The position numbers and the translations under genes are program-made. Shown piece after piece: positions 1 to 63,592 of a stretch of DNA of 64,000 nucleotides. The stretch is from Zygnema circumcarinatum SAG 698-1b. Lineage: Eukaryota > Plantae > Zygnematophyceae. The notes beneath the pieces were generated by a model that made no database searches, had not been told where the DNA came from, and saw only the letters and a list, made by a program, of their open reading frames with translations. How positions within the stretch are numbered: position 1 is the stretch's first letter; each line of letters begins with the position of its first letter. The stretch covers positions 1,736,001 through 1,800,000 of the forward strand of contig CM074821.1 of the NCBI GenBank assembly GCA_037447605.1. The letters run 5' to 3'.

Positions 1-235
1 AACACCACAACCTTGAACCTCAAAACCCTCAACCCTGAAGGCTAGAACCCAACCCCTTCAACCCTGGACCCAACTCCTAAGCCCTAAACCCGAACCTCTT
101 TCTGATTTGACCTTGAGCCTTAAACCCCGAACCCTAAACCCCGGCTCCTCTGTCCACGCGCCCCGCCACAAAAACCTCAACCCTAAACCCTGAACCCTAA
201 ACCCTAAACCCTAACCCCTTCCCCACCTCAACACC
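1..235. repeat. Degenerate plant telomere-like (CCCTAAA) repeats, in the first intron of the left-edge gene
   Basis: Repeated AACCCTAAA/AACCCTGAA units, e.g. ccctaaaccctgaaccctaaaccctaaaccctaaccc at 181-220. Confidence 0.8.
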
Positions 236-295
236 CTTGGTGGTCAATTTTTATAATTTTGCAAAGCCCACATTTTGCGGTTTATACATACATAC

Positions 296-401
296 CCTGT
301 GCGCTGATCCGACCCGCGTGGTTTCTAGTTCGCACGTGCGGACTGCCCTGAACCCTAATTCCCAGAAAGGATGGGCCCGCAAGAGCGCCCATGGCCGCCA
401 T
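296..401 (-). CDS. First coding exon of a gene running off the left edge; encodes a chloroplast-transit-peptide-like N-terminus
   Basis: ATG at 401 reads MAAMGALAGPSFLGIRVQGSPHVRTRNHAGRISAQ(G) (Ala/Ser/Arg-rich, no acidic residues), then a good donor CAGG|GTATGT at 295. Product not identifiable. Confidence 0.55.
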
Positions 402-477
402 GGCCCGCTTTGGATATCGTAGGGACCCGTCGTTGGATGCGCATGTTTTAAAACCGTTCGATGCAAAACAGGTTTTC

Positions 478-843
478 ATCTAACGGTCAGTACACGCCCT
501 CCGTATGTGCTGAATGAATCCGACGGTGGGTGTGAAGCCAACAGAAGATGTCAAAATCCAACGGCTCATGTGGGCCTTCCTTCAGCAACATGCCATATCT
601 AACGGCTCTCGTGGAACCACTCATTCCTGCGGAATCCAACGGTAGCTATGCGCCATCACGAATTGTGAAATCCAACGGCTCCGATTGAGTGCAAGTATAA
701 GTGTCACATCTAACGGCCTCTGTGCTACTTGGATTTCCGCAGGATCCAATGGCTCCTGCATGCCCTGCAGGACCTGCACGGAAGAGCTCTTCGAAGCCGT
801 TGGATGATTACCGTTAAGGAGGACGTGATGAGAGCCGTCGGAT
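478..843. promoter_or_regulatory. Array of MSA-like ATCYAACGGY motifs at ~38-bp spacing, upstream of the left-edge gene
   Basis: Forward copies start at 478, 518, 556, 597, 634, 670, 708, 744; inverted copies at 795-805 and 833-843. The core resembles the MSA consensus YCYAACGGYY bound by 3R-MYB factors. Function is inferred. Confidence 0.55.
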
Positions 844-1484
844 GCCGTGGGCAGCATTAACCGTCCGATGCGGATGCATTTCTCATACGGATATCCCAAG
901 CATTTTTCGCCATTTTCCTTCGTTTTTTTTTTTTCGTTTCCAACTGCGGCGTGACTGAACTAGCATCTGGACATGCCACACATTGACATTTTTTTTGTGA
1001 TGCATTTTTTCCTATGAAGCCTTCACACTCCTCTTTCACCAACCCTTCTAGAGACTGCATCAAGAAGCTTCACTTTTGTACCAGTAACTATTTGGTTTGC
1101 AAAACAAATCAATGCCAAATGGCAAACCACCCACAATCGCTAGACAGCATTAAGAGCAGAGACACCTCCCAACCAATATACTCGCCAGTATTCCCTTTAC
1201 CAGAACATACATATCGAAAGTTGGCACCTCTGTTTGTCGCCAGCAATCAAACTAGTCATGAACTGGAGTCATCTGTCTCTGAATCCGCACCTTTGAGTAC
1301 GCTGTGAACGAACTTCTCCCTCTCCCTCCCTCTCCCTCCCTCTCCCTCCCTCTTAACTTACATCGAACAACACGCCACTGTTGGCATCACTACATTTACA
1401 TTTATTATAGATAACATACGTCCCTCCATATTTCGTCCCATTTTGTTTGAAACCTCCCTATAGTCAACAACAAGGAGAGGAACC

Positions 1485-2919
1485 TCAATGCATGAATCCG
1501 AAAAAGCCTCCTCCCTTGTGGTCCTTGTGGCCATGGCCTTCCTTCGCCATCTCCTCATACATCTGCTTGAGCAGCATGGTGATGCCGGAGAAGGAGGGCC
1601 GCTTGGAGGGGTCTTGGGCCCACGAGGAGGAGATCAGAGAGACCAGATTTGGGCTCATTCCATGTGGCAGTTTGGGCCTCAGTGAACCGTCCGCGACTCC
1701 AACGGCCATCTGCACTCCCACCATTTAACCAACAGAGAGGGAGGGAGGGGAGGGAGGGAGAGAGGGAGGGAGGGGAGGGAGGGAGAGGGGGAGGGAGGGG
1801 AGGGAGAGAGAGAGGGAGGGAGGGGAGGGAGAGAGAGAGAGGGAGGGAGAGGAGGGNNNNNNNNNNGAGAGAGAGAGAGGGAGGGAGAGGAGGGAGAGAG
1901 AAAGGGAGGGAGGGGAGGGAGAGAGAGAGGGAGGGAGAGGAGGGAGAGAGGAGGGAGGGGAGGGAGAGAGAGTGGGAGGGACGGGAGGGAGAGAGAGAGG
2001 GAGGGAGGGGAGGGAGAGAGAGAGTAAATAGTTGCTGCCAGCTACAGTTGGAGGAAAAACTAAAAGCACAGAGGGATATCCAAAGGAGCACCTCTCTGCC
2101 AGAAACCCTAAAAGCTGTACGGCCCTAAAGAGAAGCGCACCTGCATTGGCGTCAGGAACGTTTCTATGTACGGAGGGTTTCCCGTCATCAGTTCGCACAA
2201 CATGATGCCATAGCTGCACCAATTTCCGCATTCCAACAATAATACGTTAAAAAAAAGAGAAAAATGGAAGAGAGACACGTTCAAGAGCATGCTGCGGGAT
2301 CAAAGCAAAAAAAAAAAAAGGAGCTTTTGAGAACTGAATTCGACGCTACTGTTGAAAGAGAAAGCAGAAGTTTTAAATTCATTTAAACTGAAATTACAGT
2401 AGTGCAGAGGAGTACATGAAGCAAATGCCCATATACACGCAAGACTAAGACATGGAAACAGGCATTGATGAGAACCAACTCAACCTTAAAAAACCCTAAC
2501 CCTAACCCTAAAAGCTCAAACAAACCCAATAAACCCACGATTTGAACAGCACCTGTAGATGTCACACTTTTCGGAATAGTGCTCGTGCTTCACCACTTCA
2601 GGGGCCATATACATGTAAGTGCCTGAAAAAAGAAAACGATTAAGAAATGGGTTGGATAAGGTGATAGAATAATATATACTTGCACTAGAAGTCCTCGTTT
2701 CTGAAAATGACGTTTTGTTGAAATAGAAAAAAGTAAAAAAATCCTCTAGAAACCTTTGCAAACCTTTCAACTTCCACGGCTCTAAAGTCCTTAAGGGATG
2801 GACCTCCCTAGACATAGAGAGAAGAAGAGATGATAAGAGACGACGAGGGAAGGAAGAGAGCAAGGTAAAGAGACAGAAGGAGAGGAAACAGATCGAGGGG
2901 AGTGGGCGAGAGAGAATGG

Positions 2920-2950
<31 letters not shown>

Positions 2951-3725
2951 GGAGAGAGAGAGAGAGGGGGAGAGAGAGAGGGAGAGAGAGAGAGGGAGAG
3001 AGAGAGGGACGAGAGAGGGAGAGAGAGGGAGAGAGAGAGGGAGAGAGAGAGAGAGGGTGAGAGAGAGGGAGGCAGAGAGAGAGAGGGAGAGAGAGAGGGA
3101 GAGAGAGAGGGAGAGAGAGAGGGGCGAGAGAGGGAGAGGGAGAGGGAGAGAGAGAGGGAGAGAGAGAGAGGGAGAGAGAGAGAGAGGGAGAGAACCTGTT
3201 TCCCCTGTCATTGCGGCTTCCTTTCCCTCTAGAAAGCGGGCCGATCCAAAGTCCGCTACGCGCACATGGAAGCTGCCGTCGAGGAAGACATTGCTCGGCT
3301 TCAGATCGCGGTGAACGACCATCGGCGACTGCTCGTGGAGATGCTGCATACAGGGTTTTTTCCGGCGGGATAAAAACAGAAAAAGCAAAGAGAGAGAGAG
3401 AGGGAGAGAGGGAGAGAGAGAGAGAGAGGGAGGGGGAGAGAAGAGAGAGAGGCACGGAAAAATAATTTGAATTGTGTCGCAGAAAGTTCAATACGAGACA
3501 TTTCGCATGGACCCTCGACCCTGTAAACTATGGCCTATGGACCCTGAGAAAGCATTGTAAGATTCGCTTCTCCCTCTCCCTCTCTCGCCTATTCGTCCTT
3601 CCCCTCACTCTCTCTCTCTCTCGCTCTCTCTGCCCTTGTGTCTCTTGTACACTAAGGAGGCAATTTTAGATTCTCTTCTCCTCTCGCTCTCCACGTCTCT
3701 CCCTCTCACCCTCCCTCCCTTGCTC

Positions 3726-4482: not shown

Positions 4483-5458
4483 ATCCCTCTCTCTAGCCCA
4501 TCCGCCTCCGCACCTCATCCGCCGCCACCAGCCACCCGCACTCCCTCGCCCTCAACTCCAACGCCGCCAGCTGTGGGAGAAACCTCTCTGAACCCCCTTC
4601 CTCTCCCTCTCCCTCTCCCTCCCCTCCCTCTCCCTCCCCCCCTCTCTTCCCGTGCTTCTCCTCCATGGCGAAGGAGTCCTGCAGGTCCACCCCCCCCAGG
4701 TCCTCCGCCCCCATGTGCTTCTGCGCGGCCACTTCGCGCACACGCTTGAGAGTGCTGCCAAGCCATTGGCTGTGCTTCTGGAAGGCATCGCGCTCGGCAG
4801 AGACCTCCATCACCTGGGGGAGGGAGGGAGGGAGGGAGGGAGGGAGGGAGGGAGGGAGAAATTTCAAGGGCTCAATCCTCCTAAAATTTTAAACAATGTC
4901 GCCATCCTGATCCCTAACCCTAACCCTAAAACCAGAACCCTAACCGTAAATCCTGCAATGCAGGATGCAGCATCCTGCATCCTGAGCTTCAAACCCTAAC
5001 CCTAACGCTATACCATGAACCATCATCCCTTAACCCCAAACGCTCAACCATCACCCTCAACTCTAAAGCCCCATTCTCTCAATCCAAACCCTAAACCCTA
5101 AAACCTGAACCCTAGGCCCTGACGCCGGCACTGACCTGCAGGCTGAGGCGCTTGATCTCCGCCTCCAACTGCTCATTTCCAATTTCCAGCGCCTCCACAT
5201 CGTCCGCATACACTTCCCCCTCCTGTCCGCTAAAACTAATAATATTAATATTAATATTAAATGTATAAACGTATAAATAAAAGGAGAAGAAGCAGAGTAA
5301 AGCATGTTGCTTTTGAAATGCAGCATCTTTACAAAGATCTGCAGCGCTTCGCTTTGTCTTTCGAAGTGTACCTTTTTGAGCAAAATGTCGCTGACTTGCT
5401 CCGTCGAAAGCGCTTTAAGTCTTTTTTCCACCTCCCCAACGTCTCTGCTTTCCGCCAT
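1485..5458 (-). CDS. Raf-like (STY-type) Ser/Thr/Tyr protein kinase with N-terminal coiled coil, ~464 aa, 9 exons
   Basis: Exons 5458-5333, 5222-5136, 4813-4514, 4335-4219, 4058-3810, 3343-3196, 2622-2553, 2213-2141, 1709-1485; all GT-AG, phases consistent. Motifs: GKKIGSGATADIY, DVAVK, HRDLKPSN, DFG, TGETGTYMYMAPE, RPSF. Confidence 0.92.
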
Positions 5459-7718: not shown

Positions 7719-14919
<7,201 letters not shown>

Positions 14920-15259: not shown

Positions 15260-15350
15260 ATGGTTGAGAAACATTGGCCGTCCAACCATTGCCATCCAAT
15301 GGTTGGCCAATGGTTGGCCAATTGGTTGGCGATCCAATGGTCCGACAATG
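15260..15350. repeat. CCAATGGTTGG-based repeat patch, homologous (inverted) to 28509-28565
   Basis: Reverse complement of ccgtccaaccattgccatccaatggttgg...gatccaatggtccga aligns with tcggaccagtggatcggcaaccattggacaaccattggatggcaatggttggacg at 28509. Confidence 0.75.
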
Positions 15351-27669: not shown

Positions 27670-28607
27670 GTAAGGGACCTCTCAACTTCCTTTTAAAACC
27701 TTCAACTTTCAAACCTTAAGAGTGAGTCATGGACCATATTATAATAGTCAGGCAGTACTCAGAGGCTGCTTTTTCCCTCCTACTCAATCGTTGCTCGTGG
27801 CATGTGATCCTATCCAATTGTCTCCAATAGCTGACCCGCCATGGTTGTGCTCGTAGAGCCTCCTCCCTGTTGCTTACTTTTCAAGGTTGCAGCAGTGAGG
27901 GATTTCAGAGACTACTTTTGTAGGCTATTTGGCAAATGTCTATTGTACTGAATGTTTGTTTTGAAAGATACTTTGTCGACACATGCGAGGACTGCTGCGC
28001 TCATGTGGAGCATTGCATGCTTGCAGTGCTGCCAATGAGATAAGTGGGAGGCTCTGAGGTCTAAGCTCTACAGGCTCATGTGCCCTCTCTCTCTCTCCTC
28101 TNNNNNNNNNNCCTCCCTCCTCCCTTCTCCCTCCTCCCTCCTCCCTCCTCCTGAAGAACGTTCTGTCAGGGTGCCTCCAGCTACGTAGGTGTATCTATAC
28201 TTTAGTCTCTAGATTAGATGTAGCTAGTTTTGTAGCTTCTAGGCTTCAAATGGCTAGTCGGCTAACCTAGTGTTGCTATGTTTACCGCCTGCTGCCTCTG
28301 TTTCTGTGTCGCGCATCTTACCACGTTTTTAGGTTTTTATTTTGTTTTATTGTAGTTTAGTTTAGGTACTGTTAAAGTTGCTGAATTCAGGAAAATTTTG
28401 ACTTTATTTTACAGTCTCAGTTTTAAGCTGTACCTTTCCCTTTCCCTTTCCTGCACCTGTACAAAATATTTACAGAGCTGGACCAAGTTTCGAAAAGCAT
28501 TTCACAGTTCGGACCAGTGGATCGGCAACCATTGGACAACCATTGGATGGCAATGGTTGGACGTCTACTGGTTGGCAACCAGTCGACTAGTTGCCAACCA
28601 GTGGCAT

Positions 28608-28760
28608 CCACTGGTTGGCAACCAGTCGAATGGTTGTTTCGGTCCGCAACCACTGGTTGGCAACCAGTCGAATGGTTGTTTCGGTCCGCAACCACTGGTT
28701 GGCAACCAGTCGAATGGTTGTTTCGGTCCGCAACCACTGGTTGCCAACCAGTCGACTGGT
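28608..28760. repeat. 42-bp tandem repeat, 3.5 copies, each containing a 17-bp palindrome
   Basis: Unit ccactggttggcaaccagtcgaatggttgtttcggtccgcaa starts at 28608, 28650, 28692, 28734 (partial); palindrome actggttg-g-caaccagt. Confidence 0.92.
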
Positions 28761-28939
28761 TTGTCTAATGGTCCGATCTGTGCATTTAGATTTAATCGTG
28801 GTAAATCTGTGAGCAATTGATTGATCTATTTTGTCCGATATATTGCCAATATCGAATATCCGGGATCACGATATTTGCGGATATCGATCAAGCTGGAAAA
28901 TATTCTGATTCGGTCACTTTCAGGCGAAAAGTCCACTAA

Positions 28940-29260
28940 ACGACAAGCCTAAATGGCTTCGGACCGTCGGATCAACTACTGGATCGACCGTTGGATCAAC
29001 CGTTGGAATGGCTGCGAACCGTCGATTCGCGCCCCGAGCAAACCATTGGCGTCGAACCAAATCAACCATTGCCAATGGTCGCAACCATTGATTGGAAGGC
29101 AATGGTTGTGACCATTGGCAATGGTTGTTTTGGTCGCGAATTGAATGGTCCAGACCATTGGCAATGGTTGGCAATCATTGAATCCAATGGCTGCGACCAT
29201 TCGCAATGGTTGGCTGGTCTGCGAATCAATGGTTGGCAATCAATGCAATGATTGATCCGA
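28940..29260. repeat. Degenerate ACCATTGGCAATGGT / ACCGTTGGAT repeat patch
   Basis: Many copies of accattg/caatggt in both orientations, plus accgtcggat and accgttggat at 28960-29010. Confidence 0.75.
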
Positions 29261-29891
29261 CCTGTGCAGCAGTACCGTACGATATTAGCGTCTACAGTGC
29301 TGAATATGTTTCCAGTGGAAATCGTCCACGTGTACAACCGTCCACGTGGCACGTTCTAATTGGGGTCATCATCGATCACCTCCCACTATGCACTCTCTCG
29401 CTCTACTCTCCCGCTCTACTCTCCCTACCTCTCTCCCTCTCCTCTCTCTCCCTCTCCCGCTTTCTCTCTCTCCCTCTCTCCCTCGTCTCACGCTTTTCTA
29501 TCTCTCTCTCTCTCTTTCCCTCTTCTCCCTCTTCTCTCATCCCCTTCTCCCCCTTCTCTCTTTCACTATCTCCCGCTTCTCTCTCTCCCTCGTTTCTCTC
29601 CCCCTCTCTCTCCTACTTTACATTCTCCCTCTCCCACCCTTCTCTCACGCTTAAACCCGCATTGATTTCAGTCCATTGGCGTTCGTGACATGCGGGTGAT
29701 ACCTCCTTACGCGAAAGACCTAAACCTTTCAAGGCCCAAATTTCTCATAGAACCTTCTAAAGCTAAAGCACCTCTATAACCTTAAACCTTAAAGCCCTAC
29801 AAAACCCTAAACTTTCGCCCTTGTTTCCGTACGTCCGTACATGCTGTCTGCCTCCCCCCATGGCCGCCCTCCCGCCCTCCTCCCCGCCTGG

Positions 29892-34700: not shown

Positions 34701-36620
34701 GAGATATGAGGAGCTGAATATAAGGAGTTTTGTGGAATATGAGGCGTAAGAGGTTTGAGCTGCTGAAAGATGTAGGTCTGAGCTTTTGGTGTATTTGGAA
34801 ACGGAAATGAAAATTAGGGTTAAGCTTGGCAGCTTAGCGCGAGGAGAAGGGAAGAAGCTGCAGAGACTGAGAATTAGGGTTAAGTTCAACGGAACGGCTC
34901 AACGGAAAAGAAACGGAGAGGACGCAGTTTATATGTGTCATAAAAGTGAGTAAAAAAGCTTCTCCTAGGATGCGCGCTTGCATCAAATAGTTTTCAAATC
35001 TGCCCTCATTCCTAACAGAGGAGTTCCATGCTTCCAGTTTCGGCTTGTTTGTAATTTAAGCCGGCGGAGGCTCGCATGGAAATGCTTTTGGTAGTTGTAC
35101 GGAAATTTTCGGCGAGTATTTTCCGTTTCGGGAAAAGCGTCTTTTTTCTCAGCGATTGGGAGGAATTTAAGCGGGTTTGCGGCACTCCTGAAATGCGGCA
35201 ATGCAAAATCGTCGTCTGCTGAAAGTCAGGGTTTTGTTCTGATTAAAGGATAAGACAGAGGCTTGACGATTTAGGGTTAGGGTTAGGGTTAGGGATAGGG
35301 TTCAAGTTCTAGCCCATGAGGCGAGTTCTAAACTATGAAGAGGTTTTATTCTTGTTTTGTGCTTTTTAAAAATAGCCCTTGGCCTGTCGGCAGATGGGGT
35401 ATAAATGGGGTACAGTGTGCAGGCGGACGTACATCGATTCAGGTAGCCAGAGGTGACAGTTGGCTCAACTCCAATTTTGGAACTTGGAACGTTATGGAGC
35501 CGAGTGGCGGCCTTCACTCGCGTGTGGAGTATTGGACATGTGGCGAATGGTGCTTGCGATTTAGGGTTTTTGTGGTTTCATTTGATGGAGGGTTTAAGGT
35601 TTATGTGGGTTTGGATGGCGGAATTGGACATGAGGTACGGAATGATGGATGGTTGAAGGAAATGGTTGAGTATGACATCAATGGTGATGATCGTGGTCAT
35701 GGGCATGGTGGACATGCCACGGTTATGGTCATGGTCACGGTCACGATCACGGTGAAGGTCCTGGTCATGGTCATGGTTACCAATCTTTAAGTGTTGTATG
35801 ATGGTAATTTTCTGCAGGTTCATTCCTATGGCATGGGCATGGGCATGGGCATGGGCATGAGCATGGAGCATTGTGCTCAGACCCAACAATAGTGTACGAG
35901 TGCAAATGGTGCTCTTGGGAAAGAGACGTTCTATGGCTCGTAAAGCCGTCCAGGTGCAATTCTCCAACGAACTATAAATCGCGCATCAGACTCGACACGC
36001 TGTGCACGTAGCGAACGGCAGTAATTATAATAGAGGTGATGCCCACTAACAGTTACACAACAGAGTGTCAATTACGCAAATGGGGTGTGCCCGAAACGCG
36101 TAAAAGTGCGCACGTGGCAAGCCATTATTGGCAAATGGCCCGTTGAACTGACCGAGCACTATGCAGAAACCCGTAAAAGTGCCTGACCTTGAAAATCTGG
36201 CCGTGGTTTGCCACATGGCGTGATCTCATTCGCTGATGTCGCTGTACACGTGGCATATTCGACAGTAGACCCCTTCCTGCAGTTCCCTGATTGGCTCTGA
36301 CAGCCACGTGGCACGATTCCACTGGTTCACTAACCGTTCCTGGCCTCATTCCGATTGGTCGGTCGTCAGTCCGCGGCTTCTCATTGGCTGCTGCGCTCAC
36401 CGCACGTGCGAATCTGCTGCTCAGAAAATACCCAAACGGCTCTCTCGCAGATATTGCGGTACGGTACGCGGTACGAGGGAGAGAGGGAGACGGGGAGAGC
36501 GAGGGAAAAGGCGAGGAAGGGAGGAGAGAGGAGAGGGAGAGAGGGGGGAAGGGAGGGGGAGGGAGTGCGAGAGAGCGAGAGGGAGAGGGGAGGGAGAGAG
36601 AGAGAGAGAGGGAGAGAGGG

Positions 36621-39600
36621 ATGGAGACGGCGGGGGAGCCTCTGCTTCGCCCGCCTCCCAAGAAGCTGCCTCTGACCTGGGTCGACATCCTCGTCCAGTT
36701 CCGATGGCTCATCGTGGTGCCCGTCGTCCTCCCGATCTCCTTCCTCTTCGAGTGCTGGAAACGTTTCATAGACTTCCTCTCCGACCGCAAATCTTTCGCT
36801 CAGAAGGAGGCGGAGCACGCGGCGGCGGTGGAGAAGGTGCTCGCCCGCCTCCGTTCCCGCGATCCCTCCCGGGACGGGCTCGTCTGTACGGCGCGGCAGC
36901 CATGGCTGGCGGTCGCCATGCGGAACTCGGACTATAAGAGGGCGCGCCGCTTCGAGGTCGACCTCTCGTCTTTTCGGCAGATCCTGAACATCGACAAGGA
37001 GAACATGATCGCACGTGTGGAGCCTTACGTTTCCATGGGACAGCTGTCGGCAGTTACAGTTCCGTTAGGGCTCGCGCTGGAGGTCGTCCCCGAGCTCGAC
37101 GATCTGACCGTCGGCGGTTTGATCAACGGATACGGCATTGAGGGGAGTTCTCACATCTATGGATTGTTCCAAGACACAGTATCTGCTTACGAGATCGTTC
37201 TTTCCGACGGGGAGCTCGTGCGTGCAACGAAAGATAACGAGTATTCGGATCTGTTCTATGCCATTCCTTGGTCTCAGGGAACTTTGGGTCTCCTTGTGGC
37301 GGCGGAAATTCGCATGATCACTGTGAAGGAGTATATGAAGTGGAACTATAAGCCGGTTAGGGGCACTCTGCGGGAGCTGGCACAGGCTTACAGCGACTCC
37401 TTCATTCCAAGAGACGGTGATCAAGACAACCCCGATAAAGTACCTGACTTTGTCGAGGGGATGGTCTACAGCAAGACGGAGGGAGTGATGATGACCGGTC
37501 GCTACGCTTCCAAGGAGGAAGCGAAGCTTCCTGGAAATGTAATTAACGAATGTGGGTGGTGGTGGAAGCCATGGTTTTACCAGCACGCGGCAACCTCCCT
37601 TCAGAGAGGCGAATTTACTGAGTACATTCCTACGAGGCAATTCTATCACAGGCACACGAGGTCCCTCTATTGGGAGGGGAAGCTCATCCTCCCTTTCGCC
37701 GATCACATCATTTTCCGCGTCCTGTTGGGATGGATGATGCCTCCCAAGGTTTCCTTTTTGAAGTTCACTCAGGGGGAGGCCATTCGGAAGTACTACCACG
37801 AGCGGCACATGTGTCAGGACATGCTCGTTCCTGTCTACCGCGTGGGAGAGGCGCTCGAGCTCTCTGAGGAGGAGTATGAGGTGAGAGGGAAGGGGGAGTG
37901 GGGGTGGAAGAGGGGAGGGAGTGGGAGTGGGAGCGGGAGCGGGAGTGGGAGAGGGAGTGGGAGTGGGAGTGAACGTGGGAGAGGGAAGGGGGAGTGGGAG
38001 TAGGAGTGAGGGAGTGGGAGTGAACGTGGGAGAGGGAAGGGGGAGTGGGAGTAGGAGTGAGGGAGTGGGAGTGAACGTGGGAGAGGGAAGGGGGAGTGGG
38101 AGTGGGAGTGGGAGTGGGAGTGGGGTGGGCAGTGGGAGAGAGGGAGCAGGGGAGTCAGGAGGCAGGAGGTGAGGAGTGAGGTGGGAGTGGGAGGTGGGAA
38201 TTGGGAGTGGGAGTGGGAGTGGGAGTGGGAGTGGGAGTGGGAGTGGGAGTGGGAGTGGGAGTGGGAGCGGGAGGGGGAGTGGGAGTGGGAGTGCGGTTGG
38301 GTTTGTTGGAGTGCGGGATTCTGTGATTTTCAGGGTTTCGGGTTTTATTTCGAGGTTTGGATTTTGGGTGAACATTCGGGTTTTACGTTTCGGGTTGAGG
38401 CTGCTGGGTTCTGGTTTAGGGTTTCGGGTAATGCGGAGTTTTTTGAGATGTTGGGGTTCAGAGTTTTGGGGGTTCATGGGGTGTGGGGTCTTTAAAGACT
38501 TTTTCCGTTGTGGATGTTTGTTGGTTTGTTTACTATAGTTTTGGGGGTTTTAGTTTCGTGGTTTTCTAAGGTGACAACCTTTTTCTATGGATAAATGAGT
38601 CTGTGATAATATTTAGGGTTCTGAAAAAAGTATTGGAGGGTAGGCTTTAGGTTTTATGAGGTCTATGACGAGTTTCGATTATTGTCTTGACGGTTTAGGG
38701 ACTTATGAGAGTTCAAATTAAGGTGTTTTATTCGGGGCCTTTTTGGGTGAAAAGATTGGGGTTGGATCCCCTCTCCGTCTGCCTCTCCTTCTTATCTCTC
38801 TTAGAACCGCATCTTCTCTCCTCCCCCGCTCCTCCCTCTGCCTCAGTTTTCTCTTTCTGATTCCCAACCCCATCTATCTTTTCCTCACGCCCACTACTAC
38901 TGAGTCGTCCCTCGCCTTCTTGGTACCGCCGCCTCTCCTTCCCATCTCCTCTCCTCTCTCCCACACTCTCTCTCTGCCCTCCGTTGACACCCCCCCTTCA
39001 GTATTCTTCCTCTTTTCTCTGCTGTGGTGAATTCGCCTCTCCCGCCCTCCCCTTTCTCTCTGTATCTCCTCCTCCCCTCTCTCCCTGTCTCTTTCCGCAC
39101 ATTTTCCCACCTTTAACTTCTCTCTTCCCCCCATCTCTCCTTCCCTCCCCTCGCTATCTTTCCCTACCCCCCACTCTCTCTCCTGCTCTCTCTCTCCCCC
39201 CCTCCCCCCCCCCACCCCGCCCTTTACCACCTCCCCCCTCCCGCCTCCCACCCTCTTCCTCTCCCATCTCAATTCCTCACCTCCCCCCCCCCCTCGCCCC
39301 CCTCCCCCGCACTTCCTCTCCCATCATCTCAACCGCTCCCCTTTTCTCCCACCTCCCACCCCCTTCCTCTCCCCCCAGGTGTACCCCATCTGGCTGTGCC
39401 CCCACCGCGTGTTCAAGTACCCCTACCGCGCCATGATCAAGCCCGAGCCCGGCTACGAGCACTACCAGCGGCCTGGCGACACACCCTACGCGCAGATGTT
39501 CACGGACGTGGGCATTTACTACGCGCCGGGGCCCGTCCTCCGCCGCGAAGAGTACGACGGGGAGGGGGCCGTCGCGCGCATGGAGAAGTGGCTCATCGAG

Positions 39601-62997: not shown

Positions 62998-63592
62998 GAG
63001 TCGGGGGCCCCTCACTATGCAGGCGATCGTAGAGCGTCCCTCTGGGCATGTACTCGAAGACCAGAATTCGCTCCCCCCTCGCGAGGCAGACCCCGCGGAG
63101 GCCCACGAGCGCGCGGTGCTGCGCGCGGGCCAACCGCTCCACGCGGCACTGGAAGAGGAGGGACCCACGCTCTGGGACACGGACACGCCCGTTATCCGTT
63201 TTCCGTTAACCGTTAACCGTTAACCGTTTTCCGTTTTCCGTTTTCCGTTTTCCGTTTTCCGTTTTTCGTTTTCCGTTTTTCGTTTTTCGTTTTCCGTTTT
63301 CCGTTTTGTCATACAAAAGTAGGCCGTTAGAACTCGCAAGGACAAGGACACGACGCTGCTCTCTCTGTACGAAGGAAGGGGCTACTGGAACAGTTTCGAG
63401 GGATTTAAGGGTCCTTGTTGGGTTTGGGGGAGTTTGGGAAGTTTAGGGTTCAGAATTAGGAAGGGTTTTGAGGGGTTGTTTAAGGATTCAAGAAGGGGTT
63501 GAAGGGAAGGGGAAGGTGGGGTAAGAAAAGAAAGAAGGGGCAGGAGCTGAGAGAAGAGAGAGAGAGAGAAGGAGAGAGAGCGAGAGCGAGCG

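What the first reader, a model, noticed from the sequence alone, without database searches (positions are those of the whole stretch)
478..843. Repeat-spacer array: fixed 11-bp ATCYAACGGY motif every ~38 bp with unique spacers, flipping orientation at ~775
Seen: eight forward motifs spaced 40, 38, 41, 37, 36, 38, 36 bp, then two inverted copies 38 bp apart, placed symmetrically about ~775 (744/805 and 708/843). The ~27-bp spacers are unrelated to each other, so this is not a simple tandem duplication; motif and period are kept while spacers are free. Known: the core matches the MSA element YCYAACGGYY bound by plant R1R2R3-MYB proteins, which usually occurs as a few irregularly spaced copies. 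Inference: a rigidly spaced protein-binding lattice (enhanceosome, nucleosome-positioning or transposase-binding array) controlling the adjacent plastid-targeted gene (ATG 401), possibly making it cell-cycle regulated.
Basis: partly seen in the sequence, partly recalled or inferred. Interest (0 to 1): 0.75.

Follow-up and report, generated by a model that had tools for sequence, protein, structure and literature searches.

The report
Decayed minisatellite of Myb-type promoter sites
A 460-base stretch between two genes of a streptophyte alga is an old, worn-down tandem repeat in which only a short Myb-type protein-binding motif (the plant MSA / histone 'nonamer' sequence) has been kept, so it is most likely a cluster of transcription-factor sites for the neighbouring gene, one of many such clusters in this genome and not a new kind of element.

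Summary
ATCYRAYGG occurs 10 times in 478-843 (8 forward at 40/38/41/37/36/38/36 bp, 2 inverted), against 3.5 expected in the whole 64 kb. No simulated window gave even two phased copies. Weaker inverted copies at 430, 454 and 861 extend the cluster to about 407-870.

The spacers are not fully unrelated. They keep a faint but significant similarity and a longer consensus (AAATCYAACGGCTC.TGTG), so the array is an old ~38-bp minisatellite. Its core (88% pairwise identity) was kept while the rest drifted to near-random. Spacing varies by half a helical turn, so there is no rigid lattice.

The core matches the MSA consensus and the plant histone nonamer CATCCAACG. The array fills the ~540-bp gap between the 3' end of a minus-strand kinase gene and a leftward-facing promoter-like segment. 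That segment has site II motifs, a G-box, TATA-like boxes and telobox repeats, with a candidate ATG at 401. The target gene runs off the window edge and stays unidentified.

Plastid targeting and cell-cycle control are untested. Earlier, unchecked notes of this scan place similar arrays elsewhere in this genome, upstream of housekeeping-type genes, which weakens the G2/M reading.

Verdict: a real, selected homotypic Myb-site cluster of minisatellite origin, of modest interest.

The parts
478..752 (+). Eight forward copies of the core ATCYRAYGG, period 38.0 +/- 1.9 bp, with drifted spacers.
   Evidence: Core pairwise identity is 0.885; spacers are near-random but significantly above shuffles.
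797..869 (-). Distal inverted copies at 797-805 (exact CATCCAACGG), 835-843 (ATCCGACGG, which carries CCGTCG) and 861-869 (degenerate).
407..462 (-). Proximal inverted copies at 430-438 (exact nonamer CATCCAACG, one mismatch to the 9-mer) and 454-462, and perhaps 407-415; spacing 23-24 bp.
241..406 (-). Leftward-facing promoter-like segment. It holds site II TGGGCY at 265-270 and 372-377, a G-box at 333-338, and TATA-like boxes on the minus strand at 286-281 and 255-250. A candidate start ATG at 401 (minus strand) has 35 open codons up to a donor-like CAG|GTATGT at about 297/296.
   Evidence: CpG o/e of 241-870 is 1.02 against a window median of 0.71. The function is inferred.
1..240 (.). Degenerate interstitial telomere-type (AAACCCT)n / telobox array. 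It is probably the 5'UTR or first intron of the leftward gene.
Evidence: (171-219, period 7).
1485..1724 (-). Last exon of the right-hand neighbour, a protein kinase on the minus strand. Its stop codon at 1485 faces the array.
   Evidence: ORF; PF07714, profile positions 220-256 of 258, E = 8e-4.

Best explanation
The region at about 407-870 is a homotypic cluster of 11-14 Myb-type binding sites with core ATCYAACGG, which equals the plant MSA core and the histone-promoter nonamer. It arose by tandem amplification of a unit of about 38 bp. Selection then kept the binding core, while the spacers drifted by substitutions and small indels until they are almost random. The cluster fills nearly the whole intergenic gap. 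On one side is the 3' end of a minus-strand kinase gene. On the other is a leftward-facing core promoter with site II, a G-box, TATA-like boxes and telobox repeats. The cluster therefore most likely acts as the upstream activating region of the gene that runs off the left edge of the window, by recruiting several molecules of a Myb-domain factor (3R-MYB or a c-Myb-type R2R3-MYB). Shown here: the array, its excess over chance, the contrast between core and spacers, its minisatellite ancestry, the motif match and the position between genes. Inferred: protein binding, the identity of the factor, the target gene and any expression pattern.
For: There are 10 exact motif hits in 366 bp against 3.5 expected in 64 kb. 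The chain of 8 phased copies was not matched in 150 simulations. Core identity is 0.885, whereas spacer score is 0.357 against 0.309 for shuffles; neutral decay would not leave a 9-mer intact beside such spacers. The extended consensus is AAATCYAACGGCTC. The motif matches the MSA consensus quoted in PMC5405339 and the histone NON CATCCAACG plus CCGTCG pair quoted in PMC3603003. The region has no coding potential and no Rfam hit. The right neighbour's stop codon faces the array. Site II, G-box, TATA-like and telobox motifs lie in the order expected for a leftward gene; PMC3022908 describes the telobox and site II topology. CpG is not depleted here. The same window holds younger tandem arrays with related cores: a 42-bp unit x4.6 at 91% matches, a 42-bp unit x3.2 at 70%, a 12-bp ACCGTTGGATCA x3.8, and (CCGTTTT)17. 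Two further CCAAYGG clusters lie upstream of ATGs at 14919(-) and about 29841(+). That is a birth-and-decay series. An AT-rich eukaryote-like metagenome contig (L027) shows the same pattern: five ATCCAACGGT cores at 40-56 bp with half-decayed spacers, about 630 bp upstream of a minus-strand ATG. A known precedent for amplified MYB sites that raise promoter activity is the apple MYB10 R6 minisatellite (PMC5671642).
Against: The target gene is not seen, because only about 400 bases lie left of the array. No expression, binding or cross-species conservation data could be obtained. Three of the ten copies break the YAACGG core (CGACGG twice, CAATGG once) yet keep the invariant ATC. The bound factor may therefore read ATCC as much as AACGG, and need not be a 3R-MYB. 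Only one copy fits the full 11-mer MSA with the terminal A. CpG enrichment is modest, at the 86th percentile. The array could instead serve the kinase gene as a downstream element.
Confidence: 0.65

Rival explanations
1. It is a G2/M-specific MSA enhancer in the strict sense. MYB3R activators and repressors bind the array and make the left-hand gene mitosis-specific.
For: The sequence matches YCYAACGGYY in 6 copies. The MSA core AACGG reaches 18.8 per kb here against 1.8 per kb in the rest of the window. 3R-MYBs exist in algae (PMC5405339).
Against: The target gene is unknown. No E2F motif or other cell-cycle motif is present. The same core is equally the S-phase/meristem histone nonamer. Earlier unchecked notes of this scan place like arrays upstream of EMG1, BSD, SMN-like, PIN1/HIBCH and ATG9/SRbeta genes, which are not classic G2/M genes. 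The neighbouring telobox and site II pairing is typical of translation and 'cycling cell' housekeeping genes.
Confidence: 0.2
2. It is part of a mobile element, or a minisatellite carried by one. The repeated motifs would be subterminal transposase-binding sites, as in hAT/CACTA elements or foldback elements. This would also explain why arrays with the same ~38-bp period recur in the genome.
For: Copies occur in both orientations at the two ends of the cluster. Earlier notes report another 38-bp array of the same motif, as well as foldback elements and MITEs, in this genome. The Ac transposase site AAACGG shares the ACGG core (from memory).
Against: There are no terminal inverted repeats or target-site duplication. 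The only bracketing inverted pair (407-418 / 890-901) has unrelated flanks. No second copy of 240-1000 exists in the 64-kb window. The orientation pattern (3 minus, 8 plus, 3 minus) is not the two-armed layout of a transposon. The spacers are near-random, so any element would be ancient and dead.
Confidence: 0.1
3. It is a neutral relic. An old minisatellite is decaying without function, and the core is better kept for a non-selective reason such as recent partial homogenisation or mutational bias.
For: Minisatellites and microsatellites are very abundant in this window. The spacers retain a trace of common ancestry.
Against: Gene conversion would homogenise spacers together with cores. A CpG-containing core should decay faster than its surroundings, not slower, yet 7 of 8 forward copies keep the CG. 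The same core is kept in arrays of different period in this window and in L027.
Confidence: 0.07
4. It is a stereospecific protein lattice (enhanceosome or nucleosome-positioning array) in which the exact 38-bp period is itself functional.
For: The period is tight (sd 1.9 bp). Successive sites in the last five units fall on roughly alternate helical faces.
Against: Spacings of 36-41 bp shift the helical phase by up to half a turn. The flanking copies are 23-26 bp apart. Other arrays with this core in the window have 12-bp and 42-bp periods. A period inherited from tandem duplication needs no functional explanation, and 38 bp is unrelated to nucleosome spacing.
Confidence: 0.05

Closest known systems
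MSA (mitosis-specific activator) elements bound by R1R2R3-MYB (MYB3R) in plant G2/M promoters
   Same: The core and flanks agree: ATCYAACGGCTC here against (T/C)C(T/C)AACGG(T/C)(T/C)A. Copies work in either orientation, lie upstream of a gene, and occur in multiples.
   Different: This locus has 10-14 copies in a phased array descended from a minisatellite. MSA promoters typically hold a few irregularly placed copies: 3-7 AACGG cores per 2 kb in MYB3R promoters and 1.7 in random genes (PMC5405339). The A before TC is invariant here. The target gene and its cell-cycle expression are unknown.
Plant histone-promoter nonamer NON (CATCCAACG) with the paired CCGTCG motif
   Same: Exact CATCCAACG occurs at 431-439 and 798-806 on the minus strand. 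The variant copies ATCCGACGG carry CCGTCG on the other strand. Both motifs are described as proliferation/meristem elements that occur in pairs (PMC3603003).
   Different: No histone gene, Hex (ACGTCA) motif or Oct (CGCGGATC) motif is present nearby, and the copy number is far higher.
Apple MYB10 R6 promoter minisatellite (tandemly repeated MYB-binding motif that strengthens activation)
   Same: Both are tandem amplifications of a short unit carrying a MYB site in a promoter. More copies mean more trans-activation (PMC5671642 abstract).
   Different: R6 is a young, near-perfect repeat of six units with a different (anthocyanin R2R3-MYB) site. The array here is old, and only the binding core survives.
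Telobox and site II (TGGGCY) promoter module of plant ribosome-biogenesis and 'cycling cell' genes
   Same: Telobox repeats and site II motifs lie directly next to the array, in the order expected for a leftward gene.
   Different: That module does not include Myb-site arrays. The telobox tract here is a 240-bp degenerate array, not one or two boxes.

Membership tests
MSA element cluster (MYB3R target promoter) | Sequence fits (T/C)C(T/C)AACGG(T/C)(T/C)A | tested here: met
   Seven copies fit YCYAACGG, six fit YCYAACGGYY, and one fits the full 11-mer. The consensus is taken from PMC5405339.
MSA element cluster (MYB3R target promoter) | Lies in the proximal promoter of a gene expressed at G2/M | tested here: inconclusive
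   The array lies 6-470 bp upstream of a candidate minus-strand ATG at 401 and of TATA-like boxes. The gene itself is beyond the window edge, and no expression data are available.
MSA element cluster (MYB3R target promoter) | Bound by an R1R2R3-MYB protein | not testable with these tools
   This needs DAP-seq, EMSA or ChIP.
Plant histone promoter NON/CG module | CATCCAACG nonamer paired with CCGTCG | tested here: met
   NON lies at 431-439(-) and 798-806(-). CCGTCG lies at 427, 521(-) and 835. The definitions come from PMC3603003.
Plant histone promoter NON/CG module | Accompanied by Hex/Oct motifs upstream of a replication-dependent histone gene | tested here: not met
   No ACGTCA or CGCGGATC occurs in 1-1000, and no histone ORF lies nearby.
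Minisatellite (tandem repeat) | Head-to-tail units of constant period with similarity over the whole unit | tested here: inconclusive
   The period is constant at 38.0 +/- 1.9 bp. Whole-unit similarity is only a trace (z = 3.4; 0.357 against 0.309). TRF does not call the array. It is best described as a decayed former minisatellite.
DNA transposon / foldback element with subterminal repeats | Terminal inverted repeats, target-site duplication and multiple genomic copies | tested here: not met
   No TIR or TSD was found, and no second copy lies in the window. The genome-wide copy number could not be tested.
CRISPR-type repeat-spacer array | Repeats of 23-50 bp with spacers of similar length, in a prokaryote or its virus | tested here: not met
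   The conserved part is only 9-14 bp. The genome is eukaryotic, with spliced kinase exons, telomere-type repeats and microsatellites.

The most novel reading that the evidence does not exclude
This alga may use minisatellite-amplified arrays of one Myb-type motif (ATCCAACGG, often with a second box in a ~38-bp unit) as a common promoter architecture for many genes that are not mitotic. Arrays would be continually born by tandem expansion and then eroded to 'motif plus free spacer' lattices. If so, the MSA/nonamer motif would have a broad growth-related role in the closest algal relatives of land plants, earlier than its G2/M specialisation. The repeated 38-bp unit might even have been spread by a mobile element.
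Probability: 0.2. Interest if true: 0.6.

Novelty: new variant of a known kind. Interest (0 to 1): 0.3.

Why it matters
On its own this is one more promoter with clustered transcription-factor sites. Its value lies in being a clean natural example of two things. First, tandem repeats can give rise to binding-site clusters. Second, selection can be read directly from the contrast between kept cores and eroded spacers. If the many similar arrays noted in this genome are confirmed, they would define a large Myb-dependent regulon in a close algal relative of land plants. That would give a simple handle (array presence, copy number) for asking what the MSA/nonamer motif did before land plants.

Tried and rejected
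- Coding repeat: rejected, because the period is not a multiple of 3 and no long ORF is present.
- ncRNA or snoRNA: no Rfam hit at gathering level in the window, and no hit with E below 0.89 in 1-1700.
- Chromosome-end or subtelomeric element: I first thought this because the window opens with CCCTAAA-type repeats.
- Transposon or MITE: no TIR, TSD or second copy.
- True palindrome at 775: only the motifs mirror each other.
- Higher-order repeat structure: the unit-against-unit matrix shows none.
- Metagenome scan for phased motif triplets: at least 120 loci were returned. Nearly all are ordinary near-perfect tandem or coding repeats that happen to contain the 9-mer. Only L027 resembles this array, and Pfam could not identify its neighbouring gene.
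- Search by sequence in earlier findings: blank, which means nothing.
- The large protein searches were not used, because no claim here rests on a protein's relatives.
- The organism's name was not determined.

Full report
**Observation**

The window opens with degenerate telomere-type repeats (1-240; TRF calls (AAACCCT)7 at 171-219). From 478 to 843 the pattern ATCYRAYGG occurs ten times. Eight copies lie on the plus strand at 478, 518, 556, 597, 634, 670, 708 and 744. Two lie on the minus strand at 797-805 and 835-843.

- The whole 64-kb window has 19 hits, where dinucleotide-preserving shuffles give 3.5 +/- 2.1. No shuffle reached 19.
- The forward copies are 40, 38, 41, 37, 36, 38 and 36 bp apart, mean 38.0, sd 1.9.
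- None of 150 first-order Markov simulations of the window produced even two same-strand copies at 34-42 bp, against the observed chain of eight.
- Allowing one or two mismatches adds inverted copies at 430-438, 454-462 and 861-869, and perhaps 407-415, spaced 23-26 bp. The cluster therefore spans about 407-870 with an orientation pattern of minus x2-3, plus x8, minus x3.

**Spacers**

They nearly are, but not quite.

- The mean pairwise global alignment score of the seven full spacers exceeds all 500 shuffles (z = 3.4).
- After removing a 14-nt window around the core, the score is still 0.357 against 0.309 +/- 0.015, exceeded by none of 200 shuffles.
- The repeat finder recovers a 25-nt family with 64-72% identity and a 14-nt consensus AAATCYAACGGCTC.
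- Column counts show further preferred bases after the core, roughly CTC.TGTG...C.
- Pairwise identity of the 9-nt core is 0.885.
- TRF does not call the array, and the unit-by-unit matrix shows no higher-order structure.

The simplest history is a ~38-bp minisatellite that has decayed by substitutions and 1-3-bp indels almost to randomness, except for the core. A CpG-containing 9-mer would not stay intact through neutral decay beside such spacers, so the core is under selection. The post-core remnant (CATGTG, TCGTGG, CACGTC) may be an eroded ACGT or G-box. This is my inference, prompted by unchecked earlier notes of G-box plus MSA units with a 38-bp period elsewhere in the genome.

**What it is not**

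- It is not coding. The period is not a multiple of three and the ORFs are short.
- It matches no Rfam family.
- It is not repeated elsewhere in the window.
- It has no terminal inverted repeats or target-site duplication. The only bracketing inverted pair (407-418 / 890-901) has unrelated flanks.
- The symmetry about 775 concerns motif positions only. The mirrored units are no more alike than any other pair.
- The window is not a chromosome end.

**Surroundings**

To the right, the minus-strand ORF 1485-1724 is the last exon of a protein kinase (PF07714, profile positions 220-256 of 258, E = 8e-4). Its stop codon at 1485 points towards the array. An A-rich tract on that strand near 925-1010 is a likely 3' end (inference).

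To the left, read on the minus strand, these features follow the array in order:

- the proximal motif copies, including an exact CATCCAACG at 439-431;
- an ATG at 401 in a good context;
- a site II motif at 372-377;
- a telobox-like AATTAGGGTT;
- a G-box at 333-338;
- a donor-like CAG|GTATGT at 297/296;
- two TATA-like boxes at 286-281 and 255-250;
- a second site II at 270-265;
- the telobox array.

Two gene-start models fit. In the first, exon 1 starts at ATG 401 (35 codons, no acidic residue) and is spliced at 296 into a telobox-rich intron. In the second, transcription starts downstream of a TATA-like box at about 220-250 with a telobox-rich 5'UTR.

Both models give a leftward gene whose upstream region is the array. 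In Arabidopsis and rice, teloboxes concentrate in 5'UTRs and first introns, with site II motifs just upstream (PMC3022908). CpG o/e for 241-870 is 1.02 against a window median of 0.71 (86th percentile), which is weak support for an unmethylated promoter. The gene itself lies outside the window.

**The motif**

The MSA consensus is (T/C)C(T/C)AACGG(T/C)(T/C)A. AACGG cores number about 1.7 per 2-kb upstream region in random genes and 3-7 in MYB3R genes (PMC5405339). In 400-880 there are nine AACGG cores, or 18.8 per kb against 1.8 per kb in the rest of the window. Six copies fit YCYAACGGYY and one fits the full 11-mer.

The same sequence is also the plant histone-promoter nonamer CATCCAACG. That nonamer is described as pairing with a CCGTCG element, both proliferation or meristem elements (PMC3603003). 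Exact nonamers lie at 431-439 and 798-806 on the minus strand, and the ATCCGACGG variants carry CCGTCG on the other strand. No Hex, Oct or E2F motif is present.

YAACGG is the classic c-Myb-type site (established knowledge). The most likely binder is therefore a Myb-domain protein, but the invariant ATC prefix and the three copies with a broken AAC leave its class open.

**Context in the window and beyond**

Other tandem arrays with related cores sit in the same window at different stages of decay:

- a 42-bp unit x4.6 at 91% matches (28567-28761);
- a 42-bp unit x3.2 at 70% matches (29100-29233);
- a 12-bp ACCGTTGGATCA x3.8 (28963-29007);
- (CCGTTTT)17 at 63189-63307.

The CCAAYGG clusters at 15260-15350 and 28480-29260 lie about 350 bp and about 600-1350 bp upstream of ATGs at 14919(-) and about 29841(+). 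This fits a birth-and-decay series of promoter minisatellites.

A metagenome scan for phased motif triplets returned mostly ordinary near-perfect repeats. One AT-rich, eukaryote-like contig (L027) has five ATCCAACGGT cores at 40-56 bp with half-decayed spacers, about 630 bp upstream of a minus-strand ATG. Its gene was not identifiable.

This scan has already noted similar arrays on other pieces of the same genome. One follow-up (s1-321711) reached the same reading. Those notes are unchecked. They place arrays upstream of EMG1, BSD, SMN-like, PIN1/HIBCH and ATG9/SRbeta genes. If that is right, it argues against a strictly mitotic role.

**Mechanism and verdict**

The most likely reading (0.65) is a homotypic cluster of Myb-type sites of minisatellite origin that serves as the upstream activating region of the leftward gene. 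Several bound factor molecules would give strength or sharpness of response, as shown for amplified MYB sites in the apple MYB10 R6 promoter (PMC5671642).

The period is a relic of duplication. Its 36-41-bp scatter covers half a helical turn, and the flanking copies are 23-26 bp apart, so a rigid lattice is unlikely.

Strict G2/M control (0.2, a sub-case of the main reading), a mobile-element origin (0.1), a neutral relic (0.07) and a stereospecific lattice (0.05) remain as rivals.

This is a new variant of known kinds (MSA/nonamer sites; TF-site minisatellites), of modest interest by itself and of more interest as part of a possible genome-wide architecture.

The large protein searches were not used, because no claim depends on them.

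Noticed in passing
window:1-240, 2492-2511, 4912-4949, 35270-35300: Interstitial telomere-type (AAACCCT / CCCTAA) tracts are scattered through the window, next to long GA/CT and GGGA-type microsatellites such as 1734-2024 and 2908-3193. They seem to fill introns and 5' regions.
   Followed up: partly
window:28567-28761: A young 42-bp minisatellite (4.6 copies, 91% matches) is rich in CCAGTCGAATGG / ACTGGTTGGCAACC motifs. ARAGORN's only 'tRNA-Ala' call (28622-28718) falls inside it and is almost certainly a false positive.
   Followed up: partly
window:63189-63307: A (CCGTTTT)17 microsatellite, that is AAAACGG on the other strand, gives an AACGG core every 7 bp. It lies directly beside a GC-rich exon-like stretch at 63000-63190.
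   Followed up: no
window:15260-15350 and 28480-29260: Dense CCAATGG / CAATGGTTGG arrays lie upstream of the 1635-aa minus-strand ORF (ATG 14919) and of a plus-strand gene starting near 29841. CCAATGG is the CpG-decay product of CCAACGG and also a CCAAT-box-like site.
   Followed up: partly
window:36100-36450: The promoter of the FAD-binding-domain gene (ATG near 36622; PF01565 in ORF 36291-38003) carries several CACGTGGC G-boxes and inverted CCAAT boxes (GATTGG), followed by a GA-rich 5' leader.
   Followed up: no
window:10012-14919 (-): A 1635-aa uninterrupted ORF has no Pfam match.
   Followed up: no
window:1857-1866: An assembly gap (a run of N) lies inside the GGGA-type microsatellite in the kinase gene's last intron. 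The window holds 270 N in all.
   Followed up: no
L027:4468-4700: A metagenome contig (Ga0116229_10000744, AT-rich, eukaryote-like) has five perfectly kept ATCCAACGGT cores at 40-56 bp with half-decayed spacers, upstream of an unidentified coiled-coil-like gene. CCACGTG and CCACGTCA boxes lie just beyond the array.
   Followed up: partly
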